NCBI RefSeq assembly: GCF_020745735.1
Contig: NW_026869307.1
Location: forward strand, 62,001-126,000
Direction: 5' to 3'
Source: Hemiscyllium ocellatum
Lineage: Eukaryota
DNA: 64,000 bases
Shown here: one piece after another, positions 4,300 to 61,325 of the stretch
Numbering within the stretch: the first letter of the stretch is position 1
How the letters are laid out: each line of letters opens with the position of its first letter
Made by a program: the position numbers and the translations under genes
Notes under the pieces: model-generated
What the model saw: the letters and a program-made list of their open reading frames with translations, nothing else
What the model was told of the DNA's origin: nothing
Database searches by the model: none

Positions 4300-5495
4300 A
4301 TTATTTATGAAACTATGGGCAAGGCAAGGAAGTTAGTGTTGAGTTTACCCCATTCTGAATCCATACACATGAAAAATGTAACAGCCAGAAAAGAGTGCAG
4401 TGGTCATTTAGAATGGTGTCTGGGATGAAGACCTTCAATCAGTCTGGGTAGATTAGATAACTTTTGATTGTTTTCCACAGGGCAATCACAGAAAAGGGAA
4501 GATTTCTTAAAGTTGCTCACAATTATGAGAGGTTTCAATAAAGTAAGTAAAATATGTTTTCAGTTGTGGCTCTGTCAGTAACCAGACGAAACATTTATGA
4601 TTGCTAATAGAATAAGCCTGGGACGATGCCGATTTATGGAGACTTCTACTCTAGTTTGAAAAGCACTTCCTGAATATCTGGTAGAAGCAGAGTCAATGGA
4701 AAATTTAAAAATGAAGTGGATATTTCCTCATAAATACAGAAACACAAGTTCAAGGACAAAATGTGAGGAACTGGGCTGATTGTTTTTTTTTGTTTCTAAT
4801 GACTTAAAGAACCGTAATAGCCCTCTTCAATCTGCAAATGAATCAACCTTCCCAAATTATTGCAATACATCTTGCCATTCCTTCCTAACTGGTTTTCTCT
4901 GAAGAAAGGTTGCCACCCTACCGGCTGTTGAGCTTCATCCTCTACCACAGCATGTCTCCCAACACTTAAAGGAAAGAAGAGATCCCTAAGTTAAATTCAA
5001 ATTACGAAAACACCCACAAATGTAAGCACAAATATTTACATATGTTGCCACTTACTCAGATGAAGTTCATTCGATTGACACCTGGATGGAATGGGTTGTC
5101 TTATGTGGATCAGTTGGATGGGCAAGGCTTCTTTCCATTGGGTATTGGAAGAAAGAGGCGCAACTTTATTGCATGTATCAGATCGTGGAACATTTTGACG
5201 AAGTGGATATAGGGAGAATGTTATCATATGAGTGAATCCTGAACCATGGGATACAGTTTACCAATAAAATGTTGTCCTTCGTGGACAGAGACATGGAGGC
5301 TTTTCTGTTTTCTTAGTAGATTGTACCAGTGTGGAACTCCCTGCTCCTGAATATTGTGGTGGTCGCATGATTAAATATTTAAAGGCAAATTTACTTAGAT
5401 TCTTGTTTGACAAGGGGAATGAAATTTTACTTGTGGATAGTTGGGAATGTAGAATTACAAGCATTAACTGCTTTACCATAGCTTTATTGAATGAT
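4300..5495 (+). mobile_element. Two degenerate CR1 3' fragments
   Basis: Similarity to the CR1 RT C-terminus and 3' end seen in better-preserved copies in this window. Confidence 0.5.
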
Positions 5496-5496
5496 G

Positions 5497-8400
5497 GAAC
5501 ATAGAACATTGAACATAGAACAATACAGCACAGAACAGGCCCTTTGGCCCACGATGTTGTGCCGAACATTTGTCCTAGCTTAAGCAACTATCCATGTACC
5601 TATCCAATTGCCTCTTGAAGGTCACCAATAATTTGACTCCGCCACTCCCACAGGCAGCACATTCCATGCCCCCACCACACTTTGGGTAAAGAACCTACCC
5701 CTGACTACCCTGTATTCCGCATTCTTATTTGTTCTTCCAAAATGGACAACCTCACACTTGAACGAGTTGAACTCCATCTGCCACTCCTCAATCCAGCTCT
5801 GCATCATGTCTAAGTACCTTTGCAGCCGACAACAGCCTTCCTCACTATCCACAACTCCACCAATCTTCGTATCGTCTGCAAATTTACTGAATCACCCTTC
5901 GAATCCTTCTTTCAAGTCATTAATAAAAATTACTAACAGCAGAGGATCCAAATCTGATCCCTGCCGAACTCCACTTGTAACTGGGCTCCTGGCTGAATAT
6001 TTACCATCTACCACTACTCTCTGACTTCGACTGGTTAGCCAGTTCTCTATCCAACTGACCAAATTTCCCACTATCCCATGCATCCTGACTTTCCGCATAA
6101 GCCTACCATGGGGAACCTTATCAAATGCCTTACTAAAATCCATGTACACTACATCCACTGCTCTACCCTCATCCACATGCTTGGTCAACTCCTCAAAGAA
6201 TTCAATAAGACTTGTAAGGCAAGACCTACCCTTCACAAATCTGTGCTGGCTGTCCCTAATCAAGCAGTATCTTTCCAGATGCTCATAAATCCTATCCCTC
6301 AGTACCCTTTCTATTACTTTGCCTACCACCAAAGTAAGACTAACTGGCCTGTAATTCCTAGGGTTATCCCTATTCTCTTTTTTGAACAGGGGCACAACAT
6401 TCGCCACTCTCCAGTCCCCTGGCACAACACTGTTGACAGTGAAGACGAAAAGATCATTGCCAACGGCTCTGCAATTTCCTCTCTTGCTTCCCACATAATC
6501 CTAGGATATATCCCGTCAAACCTGGGGGACTTGTCTATCCTCAAGTTTTTCAAAATGCCCAACACATCTTCCTTCCTGACAAGTATCTCCTCGAGCTTAC
6601 GAGTCCGTTTCATACTCTCCTCTTCGACAATACGATCCCTCTCATTTGTAAATACTGAAGAAAAGTACTCATTTAAGACCTCTCCTACCTCTTCCGACTC
6701 AATACACAGTCTCCCACTCCTGTCCTTGATCGGACCTACCCTCGTTCTCGTCATTCTCATGTTTCTCACATAGGCATAAAAGGCCTTGGGGTTATCCTTG
6801 ATCGTACCCTCCAAAGATTTTTCATGCCCTCTCTTAGCTCTCCTAATCCCTTTCTTCAGCTCTCTCCTGGCTATCCTGTATCCCTTCAATATTCTGTCTG
6901 AACCTTGTTTCCTCAATCTTTTGTAAGCCTCCTTCTTCCTCTTTACTAGACATTCAATCTCCCTCGTCAACCAAGGTTCCCTCACATGACCATCTCTTTC
7001 TTGCCTGACAGGTACATACATTTCAAGGACACGTCATATCTGTTCCTTGAAAAAGTTCCACATTTCAACGACATCCTTCCCTGACAGCCTATGCTCCCAA
7101 ATTATGCTCCTCAGATCCAGTCTTGCAGCATCTTATTTACCATTCCCCAAATTGTAAAACCTACCCTGTTGCACGCATCTATCTCTCTCCATAACCAAGA
7201 TGAAAGTCACAGAATTGTGGTCACCATAACCAAAATGTTCACCCACTAACAAGCCCATCACTTGTCCTGGTTCGTTACCAAGTACCAAATCCAATATGGC
7301 CTCCCCTCTGGTCGGACAATCTACATACTGAATGAGAAAAGCTTCCTGGACATACTGCACAAAAACAGCCCCGTCCAATCTACTTGATCTAAAGAGCTTC
7401 CAATCAATATTTGGGAAGTTGTAATCGCCCATGACGACTACCCTGTGGCTTCTGTACCTTTCCAAAATCTATTTCCTGATGTGTTTCTCCACATCTCTGC
7501 TGCTATTGAGGGGCCTATAGTAAACACCCAACAAGGTGACTGCTCCTTTCCTATTTCTGACTTCAGCCCATACCAACTCCAAAGGCAGATTACCCTCGAA
7601 CTGCCTTTCTGCAGCCATTATACCGTTTCTAATTAGCAACGCCACACCCTCTCCTTTTTTTTTACCACCCTCCCTAATCTTACTGAAACACCTATAACCA
7701 GGAACCTCCAACAACCATTCCTGTCCCTCTTCTATTCACGTTTTCCTGATGGCCACAACATCGTAGTCCCAAGTACTGATTCATGCCGTAAGTTCACCCA
7801 CCTTATTTCTGATACTCCTTGCGTTGAAGTATACACACTTGAACCCATCTCTGTGTCCGCAAAACATCCTGAAAAACAGCTAACCTGCTTGCTGGACTAC
7901 AAGTCCAGATCCCATCCCCATGCTAAATTTGTTTAACACCCCCCCCCCCCCCGCGAAGAGTGCTAGCAAACCTACCTCCCAGGATATTGATGCCCTTCTG
8001 GTTCAGGTGCAAGCCGTCCTGCTTGTACAGGTCCCACCTTCCCCAGAATGCAGTCCAATTGTCCAAATACCTGAAACCCCCCCTCCTACACCATCCTTGC
8101 AGCCACGTGTTCAACTGCACTCTCTCTCTATTCCTTGCCTCACTGTCACGTGGCACCTGCAACAACCCAGAGATGACGACTCTGTCCGTCCTAGCTTTTA
8201 GCTTCCAACCTAACTCCCTGAGCTCCTGAATGACCTCCCCACCTCTCTTCGTTGGTGCCAATGTGCACCACAACTTCTGGCAGCGCACCCTCTCCCTTAA
8301 GGATTCTGAAGACACGGTCCGAGACATCTCAGATCCTGGCATCAGGGATGCAACAAACCAACCAAGAGTCTCGCCCATGTGCACAGAACCGCCTATCTGT

Positions 8401-8745
8401 CCCTCTAACTATAGAGTGTCCTATAACTAACACTCATCTCCTCTCCCCCTTTCCCTTCTGAGCCTCAGAGCCGGACCTCGTGCCAGAGACCCGATCACTG
8501 CAGCTTACCCCTGCTCGACCGTCCCCCCAAATAGTAGCCAAAGCGGTAGATTTATTGTTGAGGGAAACGACCACAGGGGATCCCTGCACTGCCTGCTTCT
8601 TCCCCTTCCCACCTCTAACTGTTACCCAGCTACCTCTGTTCTCTGGCGTAACTATGTCCCTGCAGCTTCTATCTATCACCCTCTCAGCCTCTCGAATAAT
8701 TCTCAGTTCATCCGATTTCACTTCCCCGGAATTGACGGGAGAGAT
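5497..8745 (-). mobile_element. CR1 LINE, partial ORF1 (SGNH esterase-like) plus frameshifted ORF2 (APE-RT), with an internal deletion near 5710
   Basis: ORF pieces: WTAFWGRWDLYKQDGLHLN (ORF1), VVVMGDYNFP and LDLVLGNEP (APE), NYRPVSLT, YMDFSKAFDKVPH, FADDTKIGG (RT); (CTATGTT)n-like tail at 5497-5525. Confidence 0.95.
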
Positions 8746-8922: not shown

Positions 8923-8981
8923 TTATCGGATTTTAATTTGACAATCTAGTTTGCATTGCGAAATTACTTCAAATTTAGCGC
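8923..8981 (-). CDS. Module C candidate terminal exon: short tail GAKFEVISQCKLDCQIKIR*
   Basis: Strong acceptor ctcttttatttacttccag 300 nt downstream of the TM donor, phase 1 compatible, stop after 19 residues, no Tyr. Confidence 0.6.
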
Positions 8982-9281
8982 CTGGAAGTAAATAAAAGAG
9001 TTTGGATATCACTTCAAAACTTCTAACTTTAGAATAGGAAGGTCACGTATAAATCGAGTGGACAGTTCGAATGAGGGGATGAAATAAATCCACTCTATAT
9101 TGTTATGTCGTATGGCTAATCACATAACTATTTGTGATATCCGCTTCATCCTTCAAAGGTGTAGGAAAGTGCTCACATTTTCTCCGCAGATAATCACGAC
9201 ACACCTGCACTTTGCGACTTCAAACGAGGATGATTGGGCCTTGGAAATTAAAAATATTCAGTGAAATAACGAACGTCTTAC

Positions 9282-9380
9282 CAGCTGATGCCTTTAACTC
9301 GAGTCTTGTCAAAATTATTACCAATAGTAAAATTGCCAGCGTGCCAACTGCCCACCTAGAGGTCAGCAGATAATCTTTCC
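9282..9380 (-). CDS. Module C exon: transmembrane with Arg (GKDYLLTSRWAVGTLAILLLVIILTRLELKASA)
   Basis: 99 nt phase 1/1, acceptor ctgtag, donor GCTG|gtaaga. Exon end and the first 40 nt of the downstream intron are clearly homologous to the gene A TM exon. Confidence 0.82.
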
Positions 9381-9849
9381 CTACAGGATCAATAACATTT
9401 GAATAAGAAACTGCAAAGCACAAGATTTAGACACTGAGAATCGAGGTTGGGCCCAAGACCAGCTGCAAAGTACTGTCCCAGAAGGATCCCGTCCATATAT
9501 GTGAATAGGGGCTGATCCCTTTTATTTCAACCGTGTGATATGTGTTCAAGGATTATACTGTCGGTCACATGAAAAATCAGTAATACAATTATTGGAGGGA
9601 ACAGTTCCACAGAGATTTGGGAATCTTCACTTTGCGTTGCTTCTTAAGAAGAAAATATATTTTATGAAACTCGCCAATTTATATCAACACCTGCTGCAAA
9701 ACTGTCAAATTCTTACCTTCAGCAGATTTAATGCAGATTGCCTCCTGTAACATTTGGCACTTAATGCGTGCATCTTGCAATTATGTAACTCCTTTAACAT
9801 GACCAGGCGTCCAACGCATTCCAGGGGTCCGTTATCAATACAATCCAGC

Positions 9850-11090: not shown

Positions 11091-11894
11091 TTATCTCTCC
11101 CTATCTTGACTCAATGTTTTTTCTCCTTCTCAGGTCCATTCCCACTTACATCCATGATACAAAGCTTAACTGGTCTCGACAGTGTAAATGAGCAAAGGAT
11201 CTGTCCGAAGGCAGATGCTCTCAAACTGGAGAACACAGTTTTGGACCAAATAGCAAATGATTTAGGACTGAGGTGAAGAGGAACCTCTTCAACTAGAGGG
11301 TGGTGAATCTTTGGAATTCTCCATCCCAGAATGATAGAAAAGTTCAGTCACTGATAGTATGAAATACTGAGATCAGCAAATATGCAGAGGTTAAATTGTA
11401 TGTAAATAGTGTAGAAAATAGCGCTGATGAAGATCAATCATAAACTAGTCGAATGGCAGAGCATGTTCGCGGGTCTCAATGTCTATCCCTGCTCCAGGTG
11501 ATCATGTTTCTTTGTAACCTATTTAGGAATTGAAAACATTACCTTGTAGCTGTCTAAATCTGTTACGCTTTGTATGCCTGGATCCAAAGAAAGGGAATTC
11601 ATGGAATGCTTACAGGATGGCTTTTGGGAACAGATTGTCATGGAGCCCACAAGGAAGCAGGCTATTCTGGACGATTCTCCTTGTCAACCTTTTGCCTTTG
11701 CCTGAAGTGTGGAGATGCTCAGGTTAAAACTACCATCACCTGTCTCTCTCTAATGAGAGCCAACCCTGCGGTCTGGTAGACTATGGCGACTTGTTGCTCT
11801 GTCTGATCTTCCCCTCAGATGCTGTAAATTCAATGCTTTGCAAAGAATTTCATTTATTCCTTTATGCCCCCATCTCAATGAATTTCAGGCAGAA

Positions 11895-12255
11895 CTTGGG
11901 ATCACGATGGCTCTGTGCTTATTACAGCTGCCTCACATTGGCAGGAACCCGTGTTCGATTCCAACCTTTTGTAACTGTCTGTGTGGAGTCTGCATGTTCT
12001 CCCCATGTCAGTGTGGCTTTCTGCTAGCTTACCCAGTTTCTTTCCCACAATCCAAGGACGTGCAAATTCAGTCGATTGGCTATGCTAAACTGCCAATATT
12101 GTTGAGGAATGTCTAGGTTAACTGCATTAGCCAACGGAAATGCAGAGTAAAACACAGTTTGGATAGAGGGATAGGTCTGAATGGGATGCTGTTCATTGGG
12201 TTGGTGTGGACTTGTTAGCCTGAATGGCCTGTTTCCACATTGTGGGGATTGTATG
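11895..12255 (+). mobile_element. HE1-type SINE, older copy, absent from duplication copy 2
   Basis: Same body as 3634-3918 in reverse orientation; its flanks join directly in the paralog near 45005. Confidence 0.8.
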
Positions 12256-12689
12256 AAATGATGTTTAACTCTGGGGCAGGAGTCTCCATGCTGCTCCCAT
12301 GACTCTTTCACCCATTTCCAAGTGTCCCCTGTACCTGGTTCCCTCCACACACTCTTTTAGCTTGATCTCTTCATTGAGAATGGCCAACTTGACATTGGCT
12401 ACTTAATTTATCTGCTCCTCTAAAATAATTTAAATTTGCATTCCTTTGAATTTACTGCACTTCATACTCTCTGTTCTAACCTTGAATTCATTATCCCATT
12501 TGCTGATAAGAATTGTGGTGTTCCCATCTCGCTGGAATATGTGAACACCAACTTTCAGACACATCCTCTTATCTGATTCTGGTTCATGGTTCCACAGAGG
12601 TCCCACAGAACATCAAGCTGTTATTTTTGGGATGGTTGTTAACCTCATCTTCCCTAGTTATCTACCTTCCACAGTTCAGGATGAAAACT

Positions 12690-13680
12690 GTAACTATTGA
12701 AGCGTGACAGGATTCAGTGTTGTGGCCACAAATGTGCACAGTATATATTAATGGCTTAGATGTGGAAATAAATGTTCTACAGCCAGGTACGCAGATAGCA
12801 CAAAAACAGTTGGGAAGACAAGCCATTAGGATGACACAGAATTTGCAGAGGAATATAAACAGGTTACATGATTGGGCAATAATTTCAAAAAAGTGAAGTT
12901 ATTCACTCTGCCAACATGTATAGAAGAGCTGAATATTATGTAAGTGGAAAAAGACTGAAAAAACCTATGGAACAAAGAGATTTTTGAGAGCTTGTTGATG
13001 AATGTCACACACACATACACATACACACAAATTAGAATCTGAGTTGAAAAGTTAATATGGAAGGCAAATAGAATGTTACTCTTTATTTCAAAGAAATCGA
13101 GCAGATATGTAGGGAGATCTGCTAAAACTATACAAGACACTTATCAGACCACAAGCGGATTTCTGTGAACAAATTTATTCCTATTATCTAAGGAAAGATA
13201 TATAGGCATTGGAGGTAGTCTAGTAAAGGTTCACTAAGTTGATACCAGGTATGGAGGAATTGTCTTCTGAATACAAGTCGAGTAGGTTGAACTTAGAGTG
13301 AGAGGCAATCTTATTGAAATATAGAAGATTCTTATGGGATCTGGCAAGTTAAATCTTGAAACGATGTTTGCTCTTGTGGGAAAGTCCAGGTAGAGGGTAC
13401 AATCTAAGAATCAGAGGTTGCACATTTAGGACAAAGATATGAAGGAATTTCTTCTAACCGTAGTGAATCTGTGGAATTCCTTCCTACAGAGAGCTGTAAA
13501 AGCTAGGTGTTTAGTGATATCCAGACCTGAGGTAGATATATTTTTTAAATGGGAAATAGAATCAAGGATTACGGCGAAAAGGCAGGAAAGTGAAGATGAA
13601 GATCATTACATCAGCCATGACCTCATTGAAAGTGAAGCAGACTTGTCGTACTGAATGGCCCACTTCTGCTCCAGTTTGTG
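12690..13680 (+). mobile_element. Degenerate CR1 RT/3' fragment shared with copy 2 (about 45420-46270)
   Basis: CR1-like RT and 3' remnants present in both duplication copies. Confidence 0.6.
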
Positions 13681-13749
13681 TACTGGGCATATGTTTTATG
13701 AGTTTCACTCTGAGTACCCTCACAGTGTACGCTTTTATCTCTTTACCAC

Positions 13750-13822
13750 GCCTCCTCTCTCTCTCTCACTCTCTCTGTCTCTTTCGCTGTCTGTCTCTCT
13801 CTTTATCTCTCTCTCTCTCACA
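13750..13822. repeat. Imperfect (CT)n microsatellite
   Basis: Direct reading. Confidence 0.85.
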
Positions 13823-14149
13823 CCCACTCCTAAGTCGTCATCATAAGATTATGTTTTTGCAGCCCTGTTCAATTCCAAAGAAGAGGCAAGCTGGATTTAC
13901 ATCATTATCAGCGTCTCTCTCTCCACACAGGCTGCCAGACGTGTCGAGTATGTTTCATGATTTGACAAGTGTTGATCAGATCATTCCATAGCCGTCACTT
14001 CTCTTGAATTTCTTTCTGTTGTCAGATTATGAGCAATCTCTTGTGTTCAGTGGTTAACCACCATGCCAGTTACAATGCCCCAATATAATCTATGTTGTAA
14101 TTAGTCAGATTTCACTCTGAGGTAGGTTTTGTTCTGTATTACAATCAAC

Positions 14150-16720
14150 TGTGATAAAAACAAATTGTGGGTTATCCGGGACAGACTTCTGTTGAATTTA
14201 AAAGGGATCGGCGAAAATTTAAAGAAAATGTACATAGGATTACTGGACATTGCAAGATTGTCTTTAAATTTATTGCACAATTTGGAATTTCAAGACGGTT
14301 GTGACTGATGTTAAAACTTTTTTGGGATTGGAAAAATGCATTTGACAATTATTTGAAATCTTTGAGAGTGCACCAAGAGAACGAACTATGAAGTTGGAAG
14401 TAGAAAATGAAAGTTGAAACTTGTAAAGTTGAGATGCTTAAAGATTTTACTCAACAATTAGAATTAAATTGAGGGAAATCTGACATTGGCATGTCACCGT
14501 TGAATTAAAATTCAGTTGGAATTATAAAAGAAAAAAAAGGAATTAAAGAGCAATGGAAAGCATGAGAACGAAGAAGAAAAAAAGGGGAAGAAACCCACAA
14601 ATTTGATAATTTTAACTGGATAGCGGAAGGGAAAAAAATACAAAGAGGAATGGACATTTAATACTATATATTGATAATATATAGTCGGCAGAATTACAAA
14701 GTATGCCTTTGTTACAGAAAAGCTTAGTCTAATTGTTGAAAGAATATGTATTAGCTCAAAAGATGATTTTTAGTCCATTGAAAGATTTGATTTAGATAGA
14801 AATCAGTTTTAGTTCCTAAATTTACAGAACATGGAGTGGAAAGACATTTCATTCCATTTGGAAAAGTGGCTTTGAGGTTGAAGTGGCTTAAAGATATTTG
14901 GACGCAAATGTCACAGAATATTTCAGTAGGTACCATGATAAATATGAATGCCTTTTTGCTTGAAGAACAAACAGTAGAGCATGACATTGCAAGAAAAAAC
15001 CCTAAATGCATATGGCCCTCAATATATTAATGAATATGTCTTGAAATAAGAAACTAGATTAGTCAGGAATTTGTGAAATTGTTAGGAAAAAAAAGTAATT
15101 GGTATTGGTGCATTATCTGACTGAAGATAAAGAAAACTCTTTGAGAGCTCAAGACAATCATACATATGGCATTCAACAATCATATTGCAACATTACCTAG
15201 ATGAGTATCAATTATCAAAGATGTGAGAACAGCATTTCTGACAGACTCCTACGATATTGAACACAGACATTTACTTGTGGGGTATAGGTCATACGTAAAT
15301 CAACAAGTAAACTGGAATAGAATATATATCTTGGTTTTAAAAATGATTAGCTTTATGAAATAAACAGAGGAATTCCAAACAATACAGGAAAAGGCTAGAA
15401 CCCAAATGTGATTTAAATAAAAGCAAATAACATACCTTCATTACAATAAGATAGGACATACTATTGCTGAAACAAGAGACCAGTTGCAAAACTAAAAGCC
15501 CAAGGAATTCTTCGAAGAGACAGCTATATGGAAAGGAAATGCCAATTAAAGCTGCAGCAGTAGTGCAAGTGAAGCATGTTGCATAGCATTCTGTTAGGAA
15601 GAAACAGATAACTCAGACCATTTTTGAAAAATTTTATTTGATACTTTAACACAAAAACATATTATTGGATGTCCTGGACAGTTTATTTCAAAGGGAAAGG
15701 TACATCCTTGCTCTTATAAAGGAGCTATAGCAATAAAGATAATGAGAGACAATGTTTGGTTAATGAAGGGAAGAAATTATTGGATTTATACAGAACGTAG
15801 AATCTCATTCTAATATATTGAATTGGCTTAGAATATGAAATTAAAAAATGAGTCGGAGCATTTTGACCAATCCATATTGAAAGAACTGGTTTCAACTGAG
15901 TCAATGACATGACTATTCGAAGAGACCACACTGTTTACTTTTAGGGAAGTATAAATTGAAATGAAGTTGGATTGCAATACAATTGAACCACCTGGAGAAG
16001 TTCGCAACTTAAAGGTTAAGAAGAATGGAAGTAAAAACCTCTCATACAATTCCTCGTTCCTCAAACAAAATTGAATTCCTGAGCTTCTCGTGAATCTATG
16101 ACTTTCAATGAGCATTTGTGCCGAACATCAGCACGATAGCTGTAACTTTAACAGAATTGTCCAAAGGTGGGGAAAAATCAAATGGTCAGCAGCGTGCAGA
16201 TCATTATTTGAGAAGCTGAAGGCAGTATTAACAAATGACTTTGCACCTCCCCGTGATTTTGTAAGGCATTTTTGAATCAATTTGAATAGTAATGACTTTG
16301 CAATTGTTGCAGTCTTACGACAAGGTGATGAATTTGGCAATACAGAAGACTCTGGGATCCTTTCAAACGAAGAGAAAACATTATTAGAAGAAATGCTCAA
16401 CATTGGAAAGGTAAACTTTGGGATTATCGTTGACTTTATTTTAGCATTTTGAAGACAATGTTCATCATGGTGGCAAAGAAACACTCATATATACTTACAG
16501 TATTCTGTTAGCTTGTGTAAAGAAATTTATGACCTGAAATTCAAAATCGTTCAGATGGAGCTTATTGATTCAACTTTAACTATATTGTTGGAAGAGAAAA
16601 CATATTGGAAAATGCATGATCAAAATGTGATCGTGGTGAAATAGTTTAAGAATTTTGGAAGTAAATGAAAATCCATTGCTTAAATCCTGTGTAAGGAATG
16701 AGTGAGGGTGAATGAATGTA
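14150..16720 (+). mobile_element. Ancient Gypsy relic, Gmr1-type order (gag, integrase, RT, RNase H)
   Basis: PBS-like tgtgggttatccggga, gag FIPFGKVALRLKWLKDIW, integrase QGILRR remnant near 15500, RT/RNase H remnants 15830-16480. Also present at 46490-49800. Confidence 0.65.
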
Positions 16721-19700
16721 ATTTGATTATGTTGTTATGTGTTTGCGCTATGTGACCTCAGCTACTCTTTATGTATAGAGGTAGGAGCCAGACAGTTTTC
16801 TTGTTTAGGGTGAGATACTGGAAGTTGGACTACTATAAATGAAATACCAGGAAGTCTTTGCAACTTGTAAAATGAGCAATGCATTTTTTTGAGCTGTGGA
16901 ATACAGTGATGTGTATCAAAGCAGGGAGGGGAGAATTCAAGGTTGCATGACAGCCAGAGACAGTTTGCTGTGAATACTGATATAACATATTTATTCAAAT
17001 CCTCTGCCATTTCCTGGTCCCTTATTATTCTTTCCACAGACCTCATTTCCTAAGGGACCTATATTATCCTTGCCTTCTGTCTTCTTTTTATATTTGAAGA
17101 AGCTCTTGCTGTTTATGTTTTTTGTTAGACATGTTTCAGAAGATTTTAACTAAGTCTGGAACGATGACCCCTTGCTGTTGGTTGACACGTTAACTCATGT
17201 CTGTTCATTGAAACATTAATGTTTTGTTTCAGGCATCGCAGGAGTCGACAACTTATGACTGACGGGAAAAAAATTATTTAATTCAGACGATGGTAAATGT
17301 TTGGACTTCTCTAACCTTTAAGACTCACAGCTGACTCATTAAGAATGCTAACCACAGTAATCTATAGCACTCTGGATGCAAATGGCTCAGGAGATATTGA
17401 TATATTCCAGCAACATGGTAGTGAGGTAGGTGTCTGACATGAAATAAATGAATGACAAATTGGGCTCGGCAGGTTTGATGGACAACCCCTATCCATTGTA
17501 TCGATGTCCCTTAGTGCTAGGTATGACTTCAAGCCTGAATAGCTTTCCACAAATTCCTATTGACTTCAGTGTTAGTATTTGGAAATATAGAACGTAACAA
17601 TTGTAAAAGGAGACAAAATTCAAAGCTTTTTGTTTTATTGATGCAACAAGGATACAAGGAAGAGACCTGACAAGGTGAGCTGCCACAGCCCTCTACATTA
17701 GAGAAGTCCAAATATTTATCATCCTCTGAATTAGGAAACTCTTGTTTCCCTCAGTCATAAGTAGCCAAACCCTGAAACAGAGCATTAATGTTTCAATTAA
17801 TAGGCATGAGTTATCATGTCAGCCATTCATACAGTATGAGAAGAAGAGGCAGACTTTATAGTTCTGAGAGCTCATTGATGCCACACTCAATGAAATAATT
17901 CCTCGATGTCAAGACAGCCATTCTCATATCAAAACTTGAGTTCATCTCTTTTGCCTATGCTCAGTCTGAAACCCCAATGAGGTCTGGAGATCAAGAATCC
18001 TGGCTGATCATAAGCTGGACATGAATGAGTCATAATGTCATAGAGTCATAGAGATGTCCAGCACAGAAACAGGTCGAACTCGTCCATGCCGACGAGATAT
18101 CCCAACCCAATCTAGTCCCACTCACCAGCACCCGGCCCATGTCCCTCCAAACCCTTCCTATTCATATACTCATCTAGATACCTTTTAAATATTGCAATTG
18201 TATTAGCCTCCAACCCTTCCTCTGGCAGCTCATTCCATACGCATACCACTCTCTGCATGAAAGCATTTCCCCATAGGTCTCTTTTTTATCTCTCCCCTCG
18301 CACCCTAAACTTATCACCTGCAGTTTTGGACTTGCTCACCCCAAGGAAAACATTTTGTCTATTTGTCCTGTCCATGCCCCCTCATCATTTTATAAACCTC
18401 TATAAGGTCACCCCTCAGCCTCTGACACTCCAGGGAAAATATCCCAAGCCTATTCAACCTCTCCCTAGAGTTCAAATCCTCTAACCTTGGCAACATTCTT
18501 GTAAATCTTTTCTGAAACTTTTCAAGTTTCACAACATCATTCCGATAGGAAGGAAACCAGAATTGCATGCAATATTCCAAAATGGCCAAACCAATGTCCT
18601 GGACAGCCGCAACATGACCTCCTAACTCCTTTAGTCAATACTGTTGACCAATAAAAGAAAGCACACCAAACGCCTTCTTCACTATCCTACCGATCTGCGA
18701 CTTCACTTTCAAGGAGCTATAAACCTGCACTTAAAGGTATCTTTGTTCAGCAACACTCCATCGGACCTTACCATGAAGTGTATAAGTCCTGCTAAGATTT
18801 GCTTTCCCAAAATGCAGCACCTCACATTTACCTGAATTAAACTCCATCTGCCACTTCTCAGCCCATTGGCACATCTGATCATGATCCAATTGTAATCTGA
18901 AGGATCCTTCTTCGCTGTCCATGACACCTCCAATTTTGGCGTTATGTGCAAACTTACTAACTATACCTCTTATTCTCGCATCAAAATCATTTATATAAAT
19001 GATGAAACCTAGTGGATCCAGCACCAATCGTGTGGCACTCCATTGGTCACAGGCCTCCAGTCTGAAAACAACACTTCTCCACCACCCTCTGTCTTTTACC
19101 TCAGAGCCATTTCTGTATCCAAATGGCTAATTCTCCCTGTATTCCATGAGATCTAACCTCACTAACTAGTCTTCCATGGGGAAACTTGTCGAATGCCTTA
19201 CTGAAGTCCATATAGATCATGTCCACTGCTCTGCCCTCATAAACCCTCTTTGTTAGTTTTTCAAGAAACTCAGTCAAGTTTGCAAGGCATAATTTCCCAG
19301 GCACAAAACCATGTTGACGATCCCTGAGCAGTCCTTGCCTTTCCAAATACATGCACATCCTGTCCCTCAGGATTCCCACCAACAACTTCCTCACCACTGA
19401 CGTTAGGCCTCAGTGGTCTATAGTTCCCTAGCTTGTCCTTACCACTCTTCTTAAACAGTGGCACCATGTTAGCCAGCCTCCAGTCTTCTGGCACCTCGCC
19501 TGTGACTATTGATGACATAAATATCTCAACAAGGGGCCCAACAATCTCTTCCCTAGCTTCCCACAGAGTTCTAAGGTACCCCTGATTAGGTCCTGGGGAT
19601 TTATCCACTTTTATACGTGTCAAGACATCCAGTACTTCCTCCTCTGTAATATGAACAATTTTCAAGATGTCACCATGTATTTCCCTACATTATATAACGT

Positions 19701-20953
19701 CCATGTCCTTTTCCACAGTCAACACTGATGCAAAATACTCATTTAGTATCTCCCTCATCTCCTGCGGCTCCACATAAAGTCCACCTTGCTGATCTTTGAG
19801 GGGCCTATTCTTGCCCTAGTTACCTTTTTGTCCTTAATGTATTTATAAAAACCCTTTGTATTCTCCTTAACTCTATTTGCCCTCCTGACTTCCCTCTTAA
19901 GAATACTCTTACTGCCTTTATATTCTTCGAAGGATTCAGTCAATCTATCTTGTCTAAACCTGACATATGATCCATTCTTTTTCTGAACGAAATCTTCATT
20001 TGCTTTAGTCATCCAGCATTCCCTACACCTACCAACCTTTCCTTTCATCCTAACCGGAATATACTGTCTCTGGACTTTCATTATCTAATTTCTGAGGGCT
20101 TCCCATTTTCCAGCCATCCCCTTACCTGTGAACATCTGCCCCCATTCAGCTTTTGAAAGTTCTTGCCTAATACCATCAAAATTACCCTATCTCCAATTTA
20201 GAATTTCAAATTTTACATCTGGCCTCTCCTTTTCCATCACTATTTTAAAACTGATAGTATTATGGTCACTGGCCCCAAAGTACTCTCTCACTGACACCCC
20301 AATCACCTGCCCTGCCTTATTTGCCAAGAGTAGGTCAGGTTTTGCACTTTCTCTAGTAGGTATATCCACATATTGAATGAGAAAATTTTCTTCTACACAC
20401 TTAAAAAAACCTCTCCATCTAAACCCTTAACACTATGGCAGTTCCAGTTTATGTTTGGAAAGTTAAAATCCCCTCCCATAATAATTCTAGTATTCTTACA
20501 GATAACTGAAATCTCCTTACAAATTTGTTTCTCAATTTCCCTCTGACTATTACGGGGGGCTATAATACAATCCTAATAAGGTGATTATCCCTTTCTTATT
20601 TCTCAGTTCCAGCAAAATAACTTCCCTGGATGTATTTCCAGGAATATACTCACTCAGTACATCTGTAATGCTATCCCTTATCAAAATCGCCACTCCCCCA
20701 CCTCTCTTGCTTCCCTTTCTGTCCTTACTGTAGCATTTGTGTCTTGGAACATTAAGTTGCCAGCCCCGTCAATCCCTGAGCCACAATTTTCTAATTGCTT
20801 TGATATCTCAGTCCTATGTTCCTAACCATGCCCTGAGTTCATTTTGCCTTCCCTGTAAGGCTTCTTGCATTGAAATCAATAAAATCTGATTGAAGATTTG
20901 TAGCTCGGGTGTCTGTTGTTGTGGTTCTGCTCGCCGAGCTGGAAGTTTTTGCT

Positions 20954-20993
20954 GCAAACGTTTCGTTCCCTGGCTAGGGAACATCATCAGTGC
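20954..20993 (-). ncRNA. Minimal type I hammerhead ribozyme motif (inverted copy)
   Basis: Exact reverse complement of 22477-22516. Confidence 0.72.
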
Positions 20994-22476
20994 TGTTGGA
21001 GCCTCGTGTGTAGCGCTGCTTTGATGTTTCTTCCGGTATTTATATTGGTTTGTTCTTGCCGCTTCCGGGTGTCAGTTTCAGCTGCATTGATTTGTATGTG
21101 GGGTCCAGGTCGATGTGTCTGTTGATGGATGTTCTTGCCGTTTCCGGGTGTCAGTTTCAGCTGTAGTGGTTTGTATATGGTGTCCAGGTCAATGTGTCTG
21201 TTGATGGAGTTTGGGGATGAATGCCATGCTTCTAGGAATTCTCTGGCTGTTCTCTGTCTGGCTTGTCCTATGATAGTGGTGTTTTCCCAGTCAAATTCAT
21301 GTTGCTCGTTGTCTGAGTGTATGGCTACTAGAGATAGCTGGTCGTGTCGTTTTGTGGCTAGCTGATGTTCATGGATGCGGATTGTTAGCTGTCTTCCTGT
21401 TTGTCCTATATCATGTTTTGTGCAGTCCTTGCATGGTATTTTGTAAACTACGTTAGTTTGGCTCATGCTGGGTATTGGGTCCTTTGTTCTAGTGAGTTGT
21501 TGTCTGAGCGTGGATGTTGGCTTGTGTGCTGTTATGAGTCCTAAGGGTCGCAGTAGTCTGGCTGTCAGTTCTGAGACGCTCCTGACGTATGGTAGAGTGG
21601 CTAATCCTTTTGGTTGTGGCATGTCCTCGTTCCTCGGTCTATCTCTTAGGCATCTGGTGATAGTAACCACCCCAACACACACAAACGAAGCTGCATCAGG
21701 ACACTATTCAAAAGGGCCACAACACACTGCAGTACACCAGAACTGCGAAAAGAGGAAGAGGAACATCTATACAAGGTATTCGCCAAAAACGGATACCCAC
21801 GCAACTTTATCACCAGATGCCTAAGAGATCGACCGAGGAACGAGGACATGCCACAACCAAAAGGATTAGCCACTCTACCATACGTCAGGAGCATCTCAGA
21901 ACTGACAGCCAGACTACTGCGACCCTTAGGACTCATAACAGCACACAAGCCAACATCCACGCTCAGACAACAACTCACTAGAACAAAGGACCCAATACCC
22001 AGCATGAGCCAAACTAACGTAGTTTACAAAATACCATGCAAGGACTGCACAAAACACGATATAGGACAAACAGGAAGACAGCTAACAATCCGCATCCATG
22101 AACATCAGCTAGCCACAAAACGACACGACCAGCTATCTCTATTAGCCATACACTCAGACAACCAGCAACATGAATTTGAATGGGAAAACACCACTATCAT
22201 AGGACAAGCCAGGCAGAGAACAGCCAGAGAATTCCTAGAGGCATGGCATTCATCCCCAACCTCCATCAACAGACACATTGACCTGGACACCATATACAAA
22301 CCACTACAGCTGAAACTGACACCCGGAAACGGCAAGAACATCCATCAACAGACACATCGACCTGGACCCCACATACAAATCACTGCAGCTGAAACTGACA
22401 CCCGGAAGCGGCAAGAACAAACCAATATAAATACCGGAAGAAACATCAAAGCAGCGCTTCACACGAGGCTCCAACA

Positions 22477-22516
22477 GCACTGATGATGTTCCCTAGCCAG
22501 GGAACGAAACGTTTGC
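22477..22516 (+). ncRNA. Minimal type I hammerhead ribozyme motif in a Penelope-like terminal repeat
   Basis: GCA-CTGATGA-t-GTTCCCT-agcc-AGGGAAC-GAAAC-GTT-TGC: intact core, perfect 7-bp stem II, 3-bp stem I, palindromic AACGTT at stem III. Confidence 0.72.
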
Positions 22517-25321
22517 AGCAAAAACTTCCAGCTCGGCGAGCAGAACCACAACATTGAAATCAATGCAGTTTAGTTTATCAGACCTACCTTGTTCTCTGCT
22601 CTGTCCCTACCTGCCCTAACAGTTGGACTCGCTTCCCTTCTCAACTGTACCAGTCTCTGATTAATCTCTTTCCTTACTGTCCCCCTGGATACCATCCATC
22701 CCTCACCTTAATAGTTTAAATCCTCCTGAGCAGCTCTAGCAAATCTCCCTGTCAGGATATTAGTCCCCTTCCAATTCAGTTACAATCTGTCTTTCTTGTA
22801 AGGTCACTTCTATCCCAGAAGAGCTTCAATGATCCAAAAATGTGAATTCTTCTCCCAAACACCAGCCCTCAGCCATACATTATTCAGCTCTGCCCTCCTA
22901 TTCCAACTGTCACTACCTCGCAGCACAGGGAATAATCCAGATATTACTACTCTTAAGGATCTCCTTTTTAAATTCCTGCTTAATGCTTTATGTTCTCCTT
23001 TCAGAATGTCATCCTTTTCATTTCCTATGTCATTGTTTTCAATGTGTCCAATGACCTCCTGCTGGTCCTTCTGCCTTCTGCATTCTGCACTCTCTCTGAG
23101 GCATTCTTGATCCTGGTACCAGGGAGGCAACACTCCATTCTGATTTTTCGTTGCTGGCCACAGAAACTTGTGTCTGTGCCTCGGACTAGAGAGTCCCCTA
23201 ACACAGTTGATCTCTTGGAAACTGACGTACTCCTCATTTCATTAGAGCCAGTCTCGATACTAGAAACTTGGCTGTCCATGCTACAATTCCCCTGAGAATT
23301 CATCACCCACTGCATTTTCCAAAACAGCGTACTTGTTTGAAATGTGCATAGCTACAGAAGACTCGTGCACTATCTACTTACCTCTCTCACCTTTCCTGGA
23401 GTCAACCCATCTATGTGACTGTATCTGCAAATTTTCTCCCTTTCTATAACTGCCATCCATCACATCCCAATGAGACCATTCCTCATTGCCTCTAACTGTC
23501 TCTCCAACTGATCCATTTGATCTGATAGGATTCACAAACAACAGCATTTATTGCAGATATAATCCCCAGTAACACGTAAACTCTCCCTAACCTCCTATAT
23601 CCGACAGGAAGAGCATATGACTCTATTAAAGAGTCATATTTTTGCTTCTTTCAGTCTATGGACTCAGAAAATAGCATTGTCTTATTCTTTTACAAAATAC
23701 TGTTCAGGCCAACCTAATACCCATGATTTATATTTTTAAGTTTAATCAAGCGACATATCTCAATAAAACATATAATCAAGAAAGAAACCACTCTACTCAC
23801 TGCTGCAGACTTACTGGAAGGCCATGCTTAAAATATTGACTTATCTGTTTCTGTGCTGTGACCTCTCCCAAACAGATTCCTCCAAGATTAGTTGTGAATT
23901 TCACTGTTTCTTAATTCTTTCTTTCTTTCTCTCTTTCTCTCTCTCCTGCACTGACCTCACCATGTGCTCGTTGCCTTTGTATGTTCCTCTCCCTGTTAAA
24001 ACTGCTGTTGTTTTAACTTTTATTCCTCCAAAGTTCCAAAACAATGCAACAGCATATGAAGCAGTAAGTGCTGCTCCTGGAATGCAAGGAAATCACCTCC
24101 AATACCTAAACTACCCAAAAAGGAGCAGCCTGTTACAGCCAGAAATATTTCCCATCCTCCATCTTGGATTACGCAGAATCCTTTAACCTAAACCAAGAAC
24201 CATGGATGCTAAAAACCCAGAACAAACCATTACTTTCTGAAGAATCTCAAAAAATCTGACATCATCTGTGAAGAGAAGACAGAGTCAACGTTTCAAGTCT
24301 TTAGAAAGGATGATTAGAATATTGCTGTATGAGGGATGTCTAATGGCAGTGCCATTATTTGTTTTCCAAACTGTCCAGAGTAAATTGGTGAATTAAGCAG
24401 CTTGAATTTCTCTTGCATTCTTTGGACAATTTATCCTCGACACCTTTTCTACGTAACTAAAATCTTGGCCTTGAAAGATAATGAACCACCTCTTGGTCAA
24501 GATTGGCTCGTGTCTCCAACTGATGGTGAAAACATAGCTCAGTTGATAAATTCTTCACACAAACTCAAGATGATTGAAAATGAGGTGCATATACTCTTCG
24601 CAAGAGACGTTTGATGATTTCAAACATAGTACTGATGGAAGGATCAGAGACAGCATCAATTTGAGGAAGACGTCCATTGTAATATTCCTGGTGACAAAGA
24701 TAATTTCTCTATTCAATGTACATTCCAAAATAGATTTTAAAACAAGATTATTGCTCCACTGTTTGTACTTCGATATTGAGAAATCTGGTACATCTTAATA
24801 CTGTCCACCAATGTAGTTTTGAATTGCTTTGGACGAATAGAGTGCTGTATAACTTTATTGCTGACTCCAGGTAGTCTTCATCAAAATAGATGACCGGATC
24901 ACCATTGGATTCACAATGTCAAGTCCACATTCTCCCACAGATGCTCCCAGACCTGCTGCATTTTGATAGCAGCTTCTGCTTTTGTAACATATCTCCAGCA
25001 CCCACAGTTCTTTGTTTAATTTATTTGACTTGATTTTATGTAGGTATGTATTATTTTTACCAACTTGCGTTGAAAATGATGCATGCAATGCAATATATAT
25101 TGTCTGTTACAGCTTTTTGGTTTCCAGAGAGATATGTATATTGATAGTGAGTAACAAAGTTTAGATTAGATTACTTACAGTGTGCTAAAGTTGGCAAGGA
25201 AATGATAGAAAATGGAATTTCAATTGTGCATGCAGTGCAAAGCATTGCTTAAATTTGGATTATGTGCAATGCAGCGGGGCATTAGGGTCACTGGTTGTAA
25301 CTTTGACATGCCATAGCAAGT

Positions 25322-26343
25322 CAAAATATACGGTACTGGAGGAACAGGCGAGTTGACGCTTCAGAAATAAGCCTTTCATCAGGAATGTGGAGATGTTAGG
25401 GGGCTGAGAGATAAAATAGGGGCTGGGGGCTGTGCTGAGGGGAAGGTAGGTGGAATGGTGACAGGTGGGAGGTAATAACAATAGGTCAGTGGGAGGGTGG
25501 AACAGAGACGTGGGAAGGAAGGTAGGCATATAGGACACATCAAGAGGTTGGGGCCAAATTGGAGGTTTCAATCTGGGATGAAGTGGTGGGAGGGGAGATT
25601 TGGAAGCTGGTGAAATAAATGTTGATGCCATGTCCTTATGAGATTTCGAGGCAGAAGATGAAGTATTCTTCCTCTAGTTCATTGGTGGCTTTGATTTGGT
25701 GGTGGAAAGCCAGGTTTTGCATGTGCTAAGGGGACTGTGAGGGGGAGTTGAATTGTGTGGTCACGGGGTGGTAGGGTTGTTTGATGGTTATGGACCAGAA
25801 ATGTTCCCTGAACTGCTCCATCAGTTGGCATTCTGTTTCCTCAATGGAGAGAAGGCTGCACCGAGAACAATGGTGAATGTGCAGGAAAATCTCCAACGGG
25901 TGTGAAATTATCCTTTAGGTCCTTGGATGGAGGTGAGGGGGATTGCATCGATGCAGGTTTTGCACTTCGTGCGCTGGCACAGGAATTTGCCTGCTGTAGA
26001 TGGTGGGTTGGTTGGGGGTATGGACCTAACGAGGGAGTCGTGGAGGAGATGGTCCCTGTCGAATGCAGATAGGGCTGAGGAGGGAAATATATTTTCCGTG
26101 GTGGAATCTGACTGTCGGTGGTGAAACTGCCGGAGGATAATGTGCTGTATCCAGGGATTCGTGGGGCAGGAGGTGAGGTCGTGAGTCGGGGGTGGGGAGT
26201 GGGTGGGGTGGGTTCTCTCCTTGCTGTGGTTGGAAGGGTGGGGGTTGGAGGACAGAAGTGTGGGAAGTGGAGAAGACACATGGAGGGCATTGTTGATGAC
26301 GTGGGAGAGGAAATTCTGTCTATGAAATTAAAAAAAAACAGAA
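25322..26343 (-). mobile_element. Degenerate Penelope-like 3' fragment, specific to duplication copy 1
   Basis: FHHRQSDSTTENIFPS...AFDRDHLLHDSLV...KCKTC remnant. The paralogous site at about 53445 is empty; possible short duplication caagt on both sides. Confidence 0.75.
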
Positions 26344-27808
26344 CAAGTGATAGACGGTGACTTATGCTCTTTATTCCTGTTTCCCACCCTCACCCCTACC
26401 ACCCACCCATCCTGTCAGGCAAACAGGATCGTGAGCTTTGAGACTTATGTTCGTTCAAAATCAATCGTTCTATCACTGCTGCCATCCATTAAAAGGACCC
26501 ATAGTATTGTACCTGAACGACATATCACAACCTCACACTTTATTGATACCAAGATGCTGCGTGATAGCACACGAATGTAAATATTGGCCAGCCTTTATAT
26601 CTTGTTTATAAAGGAAAGTCGACAATACTTTTGGCCAAACAAATTCTTTAACAAATTTGTTGACTAGCTCTCCCTAAAGTTGTCTAAACGTTGTAGGAGT
26701 TTGAACCTAGGCACGTGACATGCTCTTGCAGTCTCTTGACTATTTTCTGTTCCCAATCGTTCCTTCGGCTGGAAATAACTTGATTTACAATGCTGGAATC
26801 TTCGGTGTATCTTTGCATTATGCTCTGTTCAGCAATAGCACCTCTCAGCAGAAACCTATGCCTTCACCTTGCTGGACATGGGGAACTGGCACATATTACA
26901 GCGTTGCAATGAAAACTGCACAACCTGGATGGCAGCCAGATGAGCATCAACCAGAGTTCATGTTGATAGCATTGGGCTTTGGGATTGGCTCTAACTGGAC
27001 ATTTCTTTGAGTGGCAAGAACTAAATTATTCTTGTGTTTCAGTAGGTTCCTTCTGTCCGTTTTCTCCAACTAAACTCACCACCCGTAATAAAGGTTTGGT
27101 TAAAACACATTCCTTGGCACTCATATTTATTCTGTATTTTGCTTTTGAATAGAATATGGTCTTATCTTTTATTTTCAGTGGAATAATGGCTCAGCCTCAG
27201 TTGCATTTTAGTAAGGCTTTCACCGTAAAGTGTAGAACTTAGTTGTATCTGTGTGCCTGTTAGGTTTGGCTGTTGTTGCATTGAAAACGATAAACATTAA
27301 ACACGAATGACGCAAAATTAACAGTTTTGGGACAGGTTGCGCACTTGTGGATTCAGCGGAGTTCCTCCTGCTTACCTATCCACTGACCGAGAAGGTCTTA
27401 GGAGATCATGTTTAGTGAATGGTTGTTTTTTGCTTAGCAGTAACAAGTTCCCTAACGGAGCTTAAATTATATTTTTAAACAAACTGCGTGCAACCTAAAT
27501 GTTAATATAGAAATGCATGTTTCAAAATTAGAAAACTTGTCCTGAACTTAGTTTTCAACTTGCGACAAGTTGGAAATGGTTGTGTAAACTTTGCTCTGGG
27601 CGTGGAAAGCTCCCGATGTTAGATTGGTTTTGCAATGGACTCGTCAGCAATTCTTCGATGTAGCATTTCCTAGTAGATACAGATATTTCAAATAGTTGGT
27701 TCTTAGCTTGACTGCAATGAACGTCAATAATGATTGCAGCACGTTTTATGTTATAAAACCAAATACTCCATAGTTCACACAGTAGTATCATCCATCTTCC
27801 CAATATAT

Positions 27809-27949
27809 TTAAATTCTTGCTTTCTTTGCCACCTTTATGCCTGCATATAATGTAGAATTGTCTTGGAGTTTGGGTGTTGATGCTTTCTTGGAACCAGGTA
27901 TTTGCAGGGTGGCATACATCAGATTGTTATCTTCGCTTCCTTTTTTGGT
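27809..27949 (-). CDS. Gene A terminal coding exon with ITIM LMYATL and ITSM-like TLYAGI
   Basis: Acceptor ttttactttcacag. Translation TKKGSEDNNLMYATLQIPGSKKASTPKLQDNSTLYAGIKVAKKARI*. Homologous exon at 60847-60951. Confidence 0.88.
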   Translation of the reverse strand, partial: TKKGSEDNNLMYATLQIPGSKKASTPKLQDNSTLYAGIKVAKKARI

Positions 27950-60846: not shown

Positions 60847-60951
60847 TTATTTCTGCACATTGTTCTGTTGTTTGGGTTTTGATGCTTTCTTGGAATCAGT
60901 TATTTGCAGAGCAACATTAACCAGCTTTTTATCTTCTCTTCCTTCATTGGT
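60847..60951 (-). pseudogene. Gene B terminal exon paralog with Tyr motifs lost (TNEGREDKKLVNVALQITDSKKASKPKQQNNVQK*)
   Basis: Aligns codon by codon with 27949-27809 and has the same ttcacag acceptor. Y to N in the ITIM; about 10-nt deletion plus TAT to TGT at the second motif. Confidence 0.8.
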
Positions 60952-61325
60952 CTGTGAAAGTAAAATTAAATATCGCCCGGTAGTCCATCGGCGACTCATC
61001 CACAGAGACAGTCGAGGTTTTAGTAAAAAGGCTTCAGTGGAATTTCGTCTCATCAATTTCCAACTTCAGGTTGTAACTGGGTTTTGTATTACTTTCTATC
61101 TGCCATATCTCTTCATGATATAGCCCAACCATAAAAATTCTTGTTATTCTGGTTTCAACGTCTTGCAAAATGAGTTAGGATTTAAGGGAACCGGTTAGTA
61201 CTTCAACTAAAGTTGCAAAGACATTAAACGCTGGTGTGCTAAAAGTATTTGCAATGCTGACATTGCAATACATTCCTTTCAAGTTCCAGTTGCGGAGCTG
61301 TGACGGCCAATAAAATCTATTCATC

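What the first reader, a model, noticed from the sequence alone, without database searches (positions are those of the whole stretch)
8923..9380. Orphan activating-type TM plus short-tail module paralogous to the inhibitory gene A
Seen: a 99-nt TM exon with the same ctgtag acceptor, LKASA|gtaag donor and intron flank as the gene A TM exon. Aligned from the C-terminus, an Arg (TSRW) replaces a Gly that lies 4-5 residues inside the gene A helix. A phase-compatible exon 300 nt away gives a 19-residue Tyr-free tail. Established: an outer-leaflet TM Arg with a short tail marks FcR-gamma/CD3-zeta-coupled receptors (NKp30, NKp46, LILRA, GPVI, OSCAR). Inference: A and C are the inhibitory and activating members of a paired V-C1 receptor family in a cartilaginous fish.
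Basis: partly seen in the sequence, partly recalled or inferred. Interest (0 to 1): 0.82.

Follow-up and report, generated by a model that had tools for sequence, protein, structure and literature searches.

The report
Orphan Arg-type membrane exon, likely gene relic
A shark immune-receptor gene cluster holds a lone membrane-anchor exon with the arginine typical of "activating" receptors, but no antibody-like exons go with it, so it is most likely the leftover of a lost sister gene and not a working receptor.

Summary
On the minus strand there is a 99-nt phase 1-1 exon (9380-9282). It shares its ctgtag acceptor, LKASA|gtaag donor and about 45 nt of intron flank with the TM exon of gene A (33904-33800). 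An Arg replaces a Gly five residues into the homologous helix. A strong acceptor 300 nt downstream would give a 19-residue Tyr-free tail.

The family-level inference holds. Gene A belongs to a large VJ-C1 receptor family of sharks, rays and chimaeras. Public annotation calls its members SIRP-like, NCR3LG1-like or tapasin-related-like. In this family, Gly-type TMs go with long ITIM tails and embedded-Arg TMs go with short tails. Module C's Arg lies in the same column as in four annotated short-tailed members.

The module itself is an island. Only 9014-9392 matches gene A. The window holds one V and one C1 exon, both gene A's, and the module lies 18 kb downstream of gene A's last exon. A LINE starts about 200 nt below the putative stop. 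The tail exon has no homologue anywhere.

The most likely reading is a relic of a decayed third paralogue.

This scan noted the same family earlier elsewhere in this genome (s1-203474, s1-195888).

The parts
9282..9380 (-). TM exon of module C. It is 99 nt, phase 1-1, and reads (G)KDYLLTSRWAVGTLAILLLVIILTRLELKASA. Arg codon AGG sits where the family has Gly.
   Evidence: The family profile scores it 15.5 bits (E 1e-3), higher than gene A's own TM exon.
8923..8981 (-). Putative terminal exon. It reads GAKFEVISQCKLDCQIKIR plus stop. It is predicted only and lies outside the island of homology to gene A.
   Evidence: It has the best acceptor in 950 nt. It has no homologue in about 180 family proteins or in the window.
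9014..9392 (-). The whole island of homology to gene A (33594-33916). It holds the TM exon, 12 nt of upstream intron and two blocks of downstream intron.
5486..8721 (-). Decayed CR1/L2-like LINE with esterase-type ORF1, endonuclease and reverse transcriptase pieces. Its 5' part starts about 200 nt below the putative stop. It occupies the place where cytoplasmic exons would be expected.
33800..33904 (-). TM exon of gene A (Gly-type).
34618..34914 (-). C1-set exon of gene A. It is the only C1 exon in the window.
37408..37716 (-). VJ-type V exon of gene A. It is the only V exon in the window. The leader exon is 37978-37924.
27812..27955 (-). Last exon of gene A, with ITIM (LMYATL) and an ITSM-like motif (TLYAGI). 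Further cytoplasmic exons lie at about 33146-33199 and 31914-32024.
60859..60957 (-). Relic or diverged copy of the family's last exon ('gene B'). The ITIM Tyr is lost (LVNVAL).
11668..28471 (.). One copy of an old segmental duplication, paired with 44783-61461 at 65-71% identity. It covers the last exon plus about 16 kb of downstream DNA. Collinearity stops at 11668, 2.3 kb above module C.

Best explanation
Module C is most likely the surviving fragment of a third, now decayed paralogue in a tandem cluster of VJ-C1 receptor genes (B, A and C on the minus strand).

An old duplication gave C its own TM exon. Later, deletion and transposon insertion removed or overwrote the promoter, leader, V and C1 exons upstream and the cytoplasmic exons downstream. 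What remains is a 380-bp island holding one intact-looking exon.

The Arg sits at the family's recurrent 'activating' position. At roughly even odds, the lost gene was a genuine Arg-TM, short-tailed partner of the inhibitory type. Otherwise the Gly-to-Arg change arose by drift after the gene died.

Shown: the homology, the Arg column, the absence of Ig exons, the transposon flanks and the paired nature of the family. Inferred: the order of events and the lack of present function.
For: 1. Homology to gene A is confined to 9014-9392. Both sides are unrelated sequence.
2. A family profile run on all six frames, tblastn with eight or more family proteins, and an Ig-motif scan find only gene A's V and C1 exons in 64 kb. 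Nothing is found between 9.4 and 27.8 kb or below 8.9 kb.
3. The module lies 18 kb downstream of gene A's stop on the same strand, so it has no 5' exons of its own.
4. A LINE starts about 200 nt below the putative stop, where gene A has its first cytoplasmic exon about 600 nt after its TM exon.
5. The C lineage has twice as many exon changes as A or the bamboo-shark B orthologue: 21 against 10 each, with 7 synonymous to 14 non-synonymous. The exon (64% identical to A) is no better kept than its intron flank (about 80%).
6. The tail exon has no homologue.
7. In other sharks, Arg-TM short-tailed members have their own V-C1 exons (P0003, P0118, P0029).
8. A second relic in the same cluster (60859-60957) shows that gene decay happens here.
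Against: - The exon has no stop, an in-frame indel and both splice sites, and it keeps a 16-residue hydrophobic core.
- In a crude neutral simulation at the observed 21% change, this happens in only about 9% of trials. An Arg at either of the two family columns arises in about 16%.
- Long neutral decay is therefore mildly disfavoured. Either death was recent or the exon is still used.
- The C-terminal 24 residues are 79% identical to horn-shark TMs, closer than gene A's own TM.
- A strong acceptor and ATTAAA signals follow the exon.
- No RNA data could be laid, so use of the exon is not excluded.
Confidence: 0.72

Rival explanations
1. Module C is a live alternative 3' cassette of gene A. Gene A's C1 exon (donor at 34618, phase 1) would splice over about 25 kb to the acceptor at 9380. 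The same ectodomain would then be made with an ITIM tail or with an Arg-TM and short tail.
For: - Same strand, downstream of gene A, with phase-compatible 1-1 exons.
- Intact ORF and splice sites, a good downstream acceptor and poly(A) signals.
- Intactness is somewhat unlikely under pure drift.
- Gnomon models in other sharks show TM-skipping isoforms of the family (P0163, P0167).
Against: - Transcription would have to pass gene A's own terminal exon and run 18 kb through LINE and Penelope-like elements.
- No annotated isoform of this kind appears in any species retrieved.
- No protein carrying this TM was returned by the database searches made with family queries; the TM peptide itself was not searched.
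- Arg-type members elsewhere are separate genes.
Confidence: 0.1
2. Module C is a relic of an ordinary inhibitory paralogue. The Arg, and the Thr, Ser and Trp next to it, are post-mortem drift. No activating receptor ever existed here.
For: - GGA to AGA is a single transition, and Arg at either family column arises in 13-20% of neutral simulations.
- The changes cluster in the N-terminal third together with a 6-nt deletion, as relaxed constraint would give.
Against: - The Ser-Arg pair at exactly the columns used by P0118 and P0039 (LLISRC), and the Arg column of P0029 and P0161.
- The rest of the helix stays hydrophobic.
- The codon is AGG, one further synonymous step beyond AGA.
Confidence: 0.3
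3. Module C belongs to a complete activating gene whose Ig exons are missing from the assembly or lie elsewhere.
For: The exon looks intact.
Against: - The window has no N.
- The DNA runs hold the words of this stretch (8800-9800) to about the same share (0.52-0.62) as those of gene A's C1 exon (0.63-0.75).
- The upstream neighbour on this strand is gene A itself.
Confidence: 0.04

Closest known systems
Scyliorhinus canicula 'natural cytotoxicity triggering receptor 3 ligand 1-like' (P0003, 271 aa), the closest complete Arg-type member
   Same: Same subfamily TM exon (...AILLLIIVWARLKLKASA), an embedded Arg, and a short Tyr-free tail of about 17-25 aa.
   Different: P0003 has its own leader, V and C1. 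Its Arg is one column further on, replacing Cys. Its tail uses the family's first cytoplasmic exon, which module C lacks.
Short-tailed Arg-TM members P0118 (Heterodontus), P0039 (Hemitrygon) and P0029/P0161 (Hypanus, Hemitrygon)
   Same: Arg in the identical alignment column, preceded by Ser or Leu. Tails are 28-36 aa without ITIM.
   Different: They belong to other subfamilies, are complete genes, and have other juxtamembrane sequences.
Mammalian adaptor-coupled Ig-like receptors with an outer-leaflet TM Arg (NKp46, GPVI, OSCAR, LILRA, Fc-alpha-RI, KIR2DL4 and macaque activating KIR)
   Same: Arg about 5-6 residues into the helix, followed by about 16 hydrophobic residues, with a short predicted tail. 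Arg-TM pairing with FcR-gamma is documented for KIR (PMC8102735) and Fc-alpha-RI/CHIR-AB1 (PMC4016189). The other examples are from my own knowledge.
   Different: No ectodomain here and no sequence relationship. The adaptor partner in sharks is unknown, and FcR-gamma was not found in sharks in the 2014 survey.
SIRP-alpha / SIRP-beta paired receptors (the name NCBI gives many family members)
   Same: A VJ-like V domain plus C1-set domain(s), an ITIM-bearing inhibitory form and a charged-TM short-tailed form. SIRP-alpha is a weak PDB hit (E 1e-8).
   Different: SIRPs have V-C1-C1, and SIRP-beta uses Lys with DAP12 (own knowledge). The similarity is no closer than to Ig light chains, B7-H6, CD276 or UrIg2, so orthology is not shown.
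Gene fragments in primate KIR/LILR clusters (own knowledge)
   Same: Partial paralogues left inside fast-evolving paired-receptor clusters.
   Different: Different family. Here only one exon survives.

Membership tests
Adaptor-coupled activating Ig-like receptor | Extracellular Ig domain(s) encoded by the same gene | tested here: not met
   No V or C1 exon other than gene A's in the 64 kb, by profile search, tblastn and motif scan.
Adaptor-coupled activating Ig-like receptor | Basic residue inside the outer third of the TM helix | tested here: met
   The Arg is at position 5-6 of the best 19-, 21- and 23-residue Wimley-White windows and of the 21- and 23-residue Kyte-Doolittle windows. Only the 19-residue KD window excludes it. 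By homology it is residue 6 of a 22-residue family helix.
Adaptor-coupled activating Ig-like receptor | Short cytoplasmic tail without signalling motifs | tested here: inconclusive
   A 19-residue Tyr-free tail is predicted from the best nearby acceptor. It has no homologue and no transcript support.
Adaptor-coupled activating Ig-like receptor | Association with an ITAM adaptor through a TM Asp | not testable with these tools
   This needs co-expression and co-immunoprecipitation. FcR-gamma was reported absent from shark genomes in 2014 (PMC4016189).
Adaptor-coupled activating Ig-like receptor | Transcribed and spliced | not tested
Two small RNA runs of the organism hold none of the words, but they hold none of gene A's either.
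Shark/ray/chimaera VJ-C1 receptor family (annotated SIRP-like, NCR3LG1-like, tapasin-related-like) | Family-type TM exon (phase 1-1, ..GCAGG..AILLL..RLKLKAS) | tested here: met
   79% identity over 24 aa to Heterodontus TMs. Profile hit E 1e-3. Alignment A2.
Shark/ray/chimaera VJ-C1 receptor family (annotated SIRP-like, NCR3LG1-like, tapasin-related-like) | Leader, VJ exon and C1 exon | tested here: not met
Gene relic (partial pseudogene) | Only part of the parent gene is present, bounded by unrelated or transposon DNA | tested here: met
   The island is 9014-9392. A LINE lies at 5486-8721. Collinearity of the old duplication ends at 11668.
Gene relic (partial pseudogene) | Disabling mutations in what remains | tested here: not met
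   The ORF, the AG and the GT are intact. This is expected by chance in about 25% of neutral trials, or about 9% if the hydrophobic core must also be kept.

The most novel reading that the evidence does not exclude
Gene A uses module C as an alternative terminal cassette. One V-C1 ectodomain would then be displayed either with an ITIM/ITSM tail or with an Arg-TM and a LINE-bordered short tail. That would be a paired receptor made from a single gene, with a retrotransposon insertion having created the truncating exon.
Probability: 0.08. Interest if true: 0.7.

Novelty: new member of a known kind. Interest (0 to 1): 0.3.

Why it matters
The module by itself is probably dead DNA and matters little.

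The family behind it is of more interest. It is a large VJ-C1 receptor family in cartilaginous fish in which Gly-type TMs with ITIM tails and Arg-type TMs with short tails recur. The Arg has arisen at the same one or two helix positions in several subfamilies. That is the paired-receptor logic of KIR, LILR and SIRP, present in the oldest jawed vertebrates. It appears only under misleading automatic names in the databases, and I found no paper describing it.

Module C adds one more, apparently independent, Gly-to-Arg event in the gene A subfamily. It also gives an example of turnover in such a cluster.

Tried and rejected
- RNA evidence. Two run searches found mostly DNA-like runs, which hold similar word shares for the mostly non-coding stretch around module C and for gene A's C1 exon. 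They also found two 2026 single-cell poly(A) runs.
- Orthologous DNA. The C. plagiosum and S. torazame loci could not be fetched because the files are too large.
- C. punctatum L001 holds a complete inhibitory paralogue, probably the gene B orthologue, but ends 2.8 kb after it. L002 ends 360 nt after its C1 exon.
- Protein database. No protein of this species for gene A, and none carrying module C's TM, was returned by the searches made with family queries; the TM peptide itself was not searched.
- A second TM type of the family (R...DH, as in P0002 and P0169) was looked for in the window and not found.
- Codon-level analysis of the 99-nt exon cannot separate selection from drift.
- Chance similarity was rejected.
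- UrIg/UrIg2 were considered and rejected as the family. They have many C domains and give only a weak C1 match.

Full report
**What is there**

On the minus strand, 9380-9282 is a 99-nt open exon. It is bounded by ctgtag| and |gtaaga and reads (G)KDYLLTSRWAVGTLAILLLVIILTRLELKASA in phase 1-1.

Gene A's TM exon (33904-33800) has the same acceptor hexamer and the same CAGCTG|gtaaga donor. About 45 nt of its downstream intron is about 80% identical.

The match is not chance:
- A 21-mer over the donor occurs twice, against none in 100 shuffles.
- blastn gives 70% identity over 159 nt, E 5e-17, plus a second collinear block at 9014-9086 / 33594-33663.

The DNA alignment places a single 6-nt in-frame indel near the exon start. 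It aligns AGG (Arg) in C with GGA (Gly) in gene A and in a bamboo-shark paralogue.

Three hundred nucleotides downstream, the best polypyrimidine acceptor of the neighbourhood (8981) opens a 19-codon Tyr-free frame that ends at 8923. ATTAAA signals lie at 8937 and 8777.

**Gene A and the family**

Gene A has these parts:
- leader 37978-37924
- VJ-type V exon 37716-37408
- C1 exon 34914-34618
- TM exon
- cytoplasmic exons near 33.2, 32.0 and 27.9 kb

Its last exon carries LMYATL and TLYAGI. The Chiloscyllium plagiosum orthologue (P0167, 97% identical in V) keeps these motifs.

A full HMMER search with a catshark relative found 374 representatives at E<=1e-10. Those of receptor size come from sharks, rays and chimaeras. 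They carry automatic names such as 'tyrosine-protein phosphatase non-receptor type substrate 1-like', 'natural cytotoxicity triggering receptor 3 ligand 1-like' and 'tapasin-related protein-like'.

Against solved structures the family is no closer to SIRP-alpha than to Ig light chains, B7-H6, CD276 or UrIg2.

I found no paper describing the family. The UrIg/UrIg2 papers concern different, multi-C-domain genes.

**Is the Arg an 'activating' signature in this family?**

Yes, at family level.
- 23 proteins have an Arg or Lys embedded after hydrophobic residues at the N-terminal end of the TM. Their median tail is 29 aa.
- 50 proteins have none. Their median tail is 88 aa, mostly with ITIMs.
- Fisher p is 0.011. 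The sequences are not independent and the ITIM pattern is loose.

In alignment A2 the family motif is ..x-G-C-A-G-G... The Gly column holds Arg in module C, P0118, P0039, P0029 and P0161. The next column holds Arg in P0003 and P0158.

Each Arg form has a close Gly-type or Cys-type counterpart:
- P0118/P0039 against P0076/P0069
- P0029 against P0095
- P0003 against P0171
- module C against P0005 and gene A

The change has therefore happened repeatedly.

Wimley-White windows of 19, 21 and 23 residues and Kyte-Doolittle windows of 21 and 23 residues keep the Arg inside the span, at position 5-6.

**Why the module is probably not a working receptor**

1. Homology to gene A is limited to 9014-9392.
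2. The window holds one V and one C1 exon, both gene A's. A profile built from 89 family proteins and run on all six frames finds only these:
   - gene A's V, C1, cytoplasmic and last exons (its own TM exon scores only E 0.14)
   - module C's TM exon
   - a degenerate last exon at 60859-60957

   tblastn and an Ig-motif scan agree.
3. On its strand the module lies 18 kb downstream of gene A's stop, so its upstream neighbour is a complete gene.
4. An old segmental duplication (11668-28471 against 44783-61461, 65-71% identity) shows that the cluster grew by tandem copying. Collinearity stops 2.3 kb above the module, and nothing corresponding to gene A's 5' half follows.
5. A decayed CR1/L2-like LINE (esterase ORF1, endonuclease, RT) occupies 5486-8721. 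It begins about 200 nt below the putative stop, where cytoplasmic exons would be expected.
6. The putative tail exon lies just outside the homology island. It resembles nothing in about 180 family proteins.
7. The C lineage has about twice the exon changes of A or the bamboo-shark B orthologue, with 7 synonymous to 14 non-synonymous.

**What speaks the other way**

The exon is intact and still strongly hydrophobic. In a crude neutral simulation at the observed 21% change:
- open frame plus both splice sites survive in about 25% of trials
- the hydrophobic core is also kept in about 9% of trials
- an Arg at one of the two family columns arises in about 16% of trials

Its C-terminal 24 residues are 79% identical to horn-shark TMs, closer than gene A's own TM.

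So the exon was probably under selection for much of its history. Either the gene died fairly recently, or the exon is still used, for instance as an alternative end of gene A. I could not test this. The fetchable bamboo-shark loci stop short of the syntenic interval.

**Verdict**

- The reading 'activating-type TM of a paired family' is supported for the family and plausible for the history of this copy.
- 'C is the activating member paired with A' is not supported. Module C is most likely (about 0.7) a relic of a lost third paralogue, and it is about even whether that gene was truly Arg-type.
- A live alternative cassette of gene A keeps about 0.1.
- Earlier notes of this scan describe the same family elsewhere in this genome (s1-203474, s1-195888) and gene A itself (s1-210518). 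According to s1-203474 the genome is the epaulette shark, which I did not verify independently.

Noticed in passing
window 60859-60957 (-), within 60715-61461: A diverged copy of the family's last cytoplasmic exon (SQTNEGREDKKLVNVALQITDSKKASKPKQQNN) with the ITIM Tyr replaced. It is closest to the last exon of the C. punctatum gene in L001. It is probably the 3' end of a 'gene B' whose body lies beyond the window, or a relic.
   Followed up: partly
family proteins P0002, P0004, P0023, P0038, P0066, P0071, P0091, P0101, P0169, P0172: A second, well-conserved TM type in the same family: Arg near the outer end and Asp-His at the inner end (e.g. VVITRLVLGFLVILGLLGIIVDHV), often followed by a conserved short end GK(D/G/E)RLxISxSAAxN... 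It looks like a dedicated adaptor-binding TM. It is absent from this window.
   Followed up: partly
P0167 (Chiloscyllium plagiosum orthologue of gene A): The public model spans 24.5 kb, has two 95%-identical C1 domains and no TM. The bamboo shark may have two adjacent gene A-like copies merged into one model. The DNA could not be fetched.
   Followed up: no
window 31914-32024 (-): Gene A's membrane-proximal ITIM is lost in this species and in C. plagiosum (AASAAVKL where relatives have TAYATLNL / AAYASLNF). Only the distal ITIM and the ITSM-like motif remain.
   Followed up: partly
window 20917-22553: A 1.65-kb perfect-register inverted duplication (92.6% identity). Each arm carries an ORF of about 210-230 aa with a GIY-YIG-like stretch (YKIPCKDC..GQTGR). 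It looks like a head-to-head pair of Penelope-like elements.
   Followed up: no
window 59086-59371: Two tandem copies of a 142-144-nt unit at 97% identity.
   Followed up: no
window 3654-3919, 11903-12243 (inverted), 34243-34557: Three copies (71-83% identity) of a short interspersed repeat. One lies in gene A's C1-TM intron and one lies just above the end of the old duplication.
   Followed up: no
L001 13130-13150 (C. punctatum): The TM-exon acceptor ctgtag of the family is ctgtat in this bamboo-shark paralogue. An AG 9 nt further on would keep the frame.
   Followed up: no
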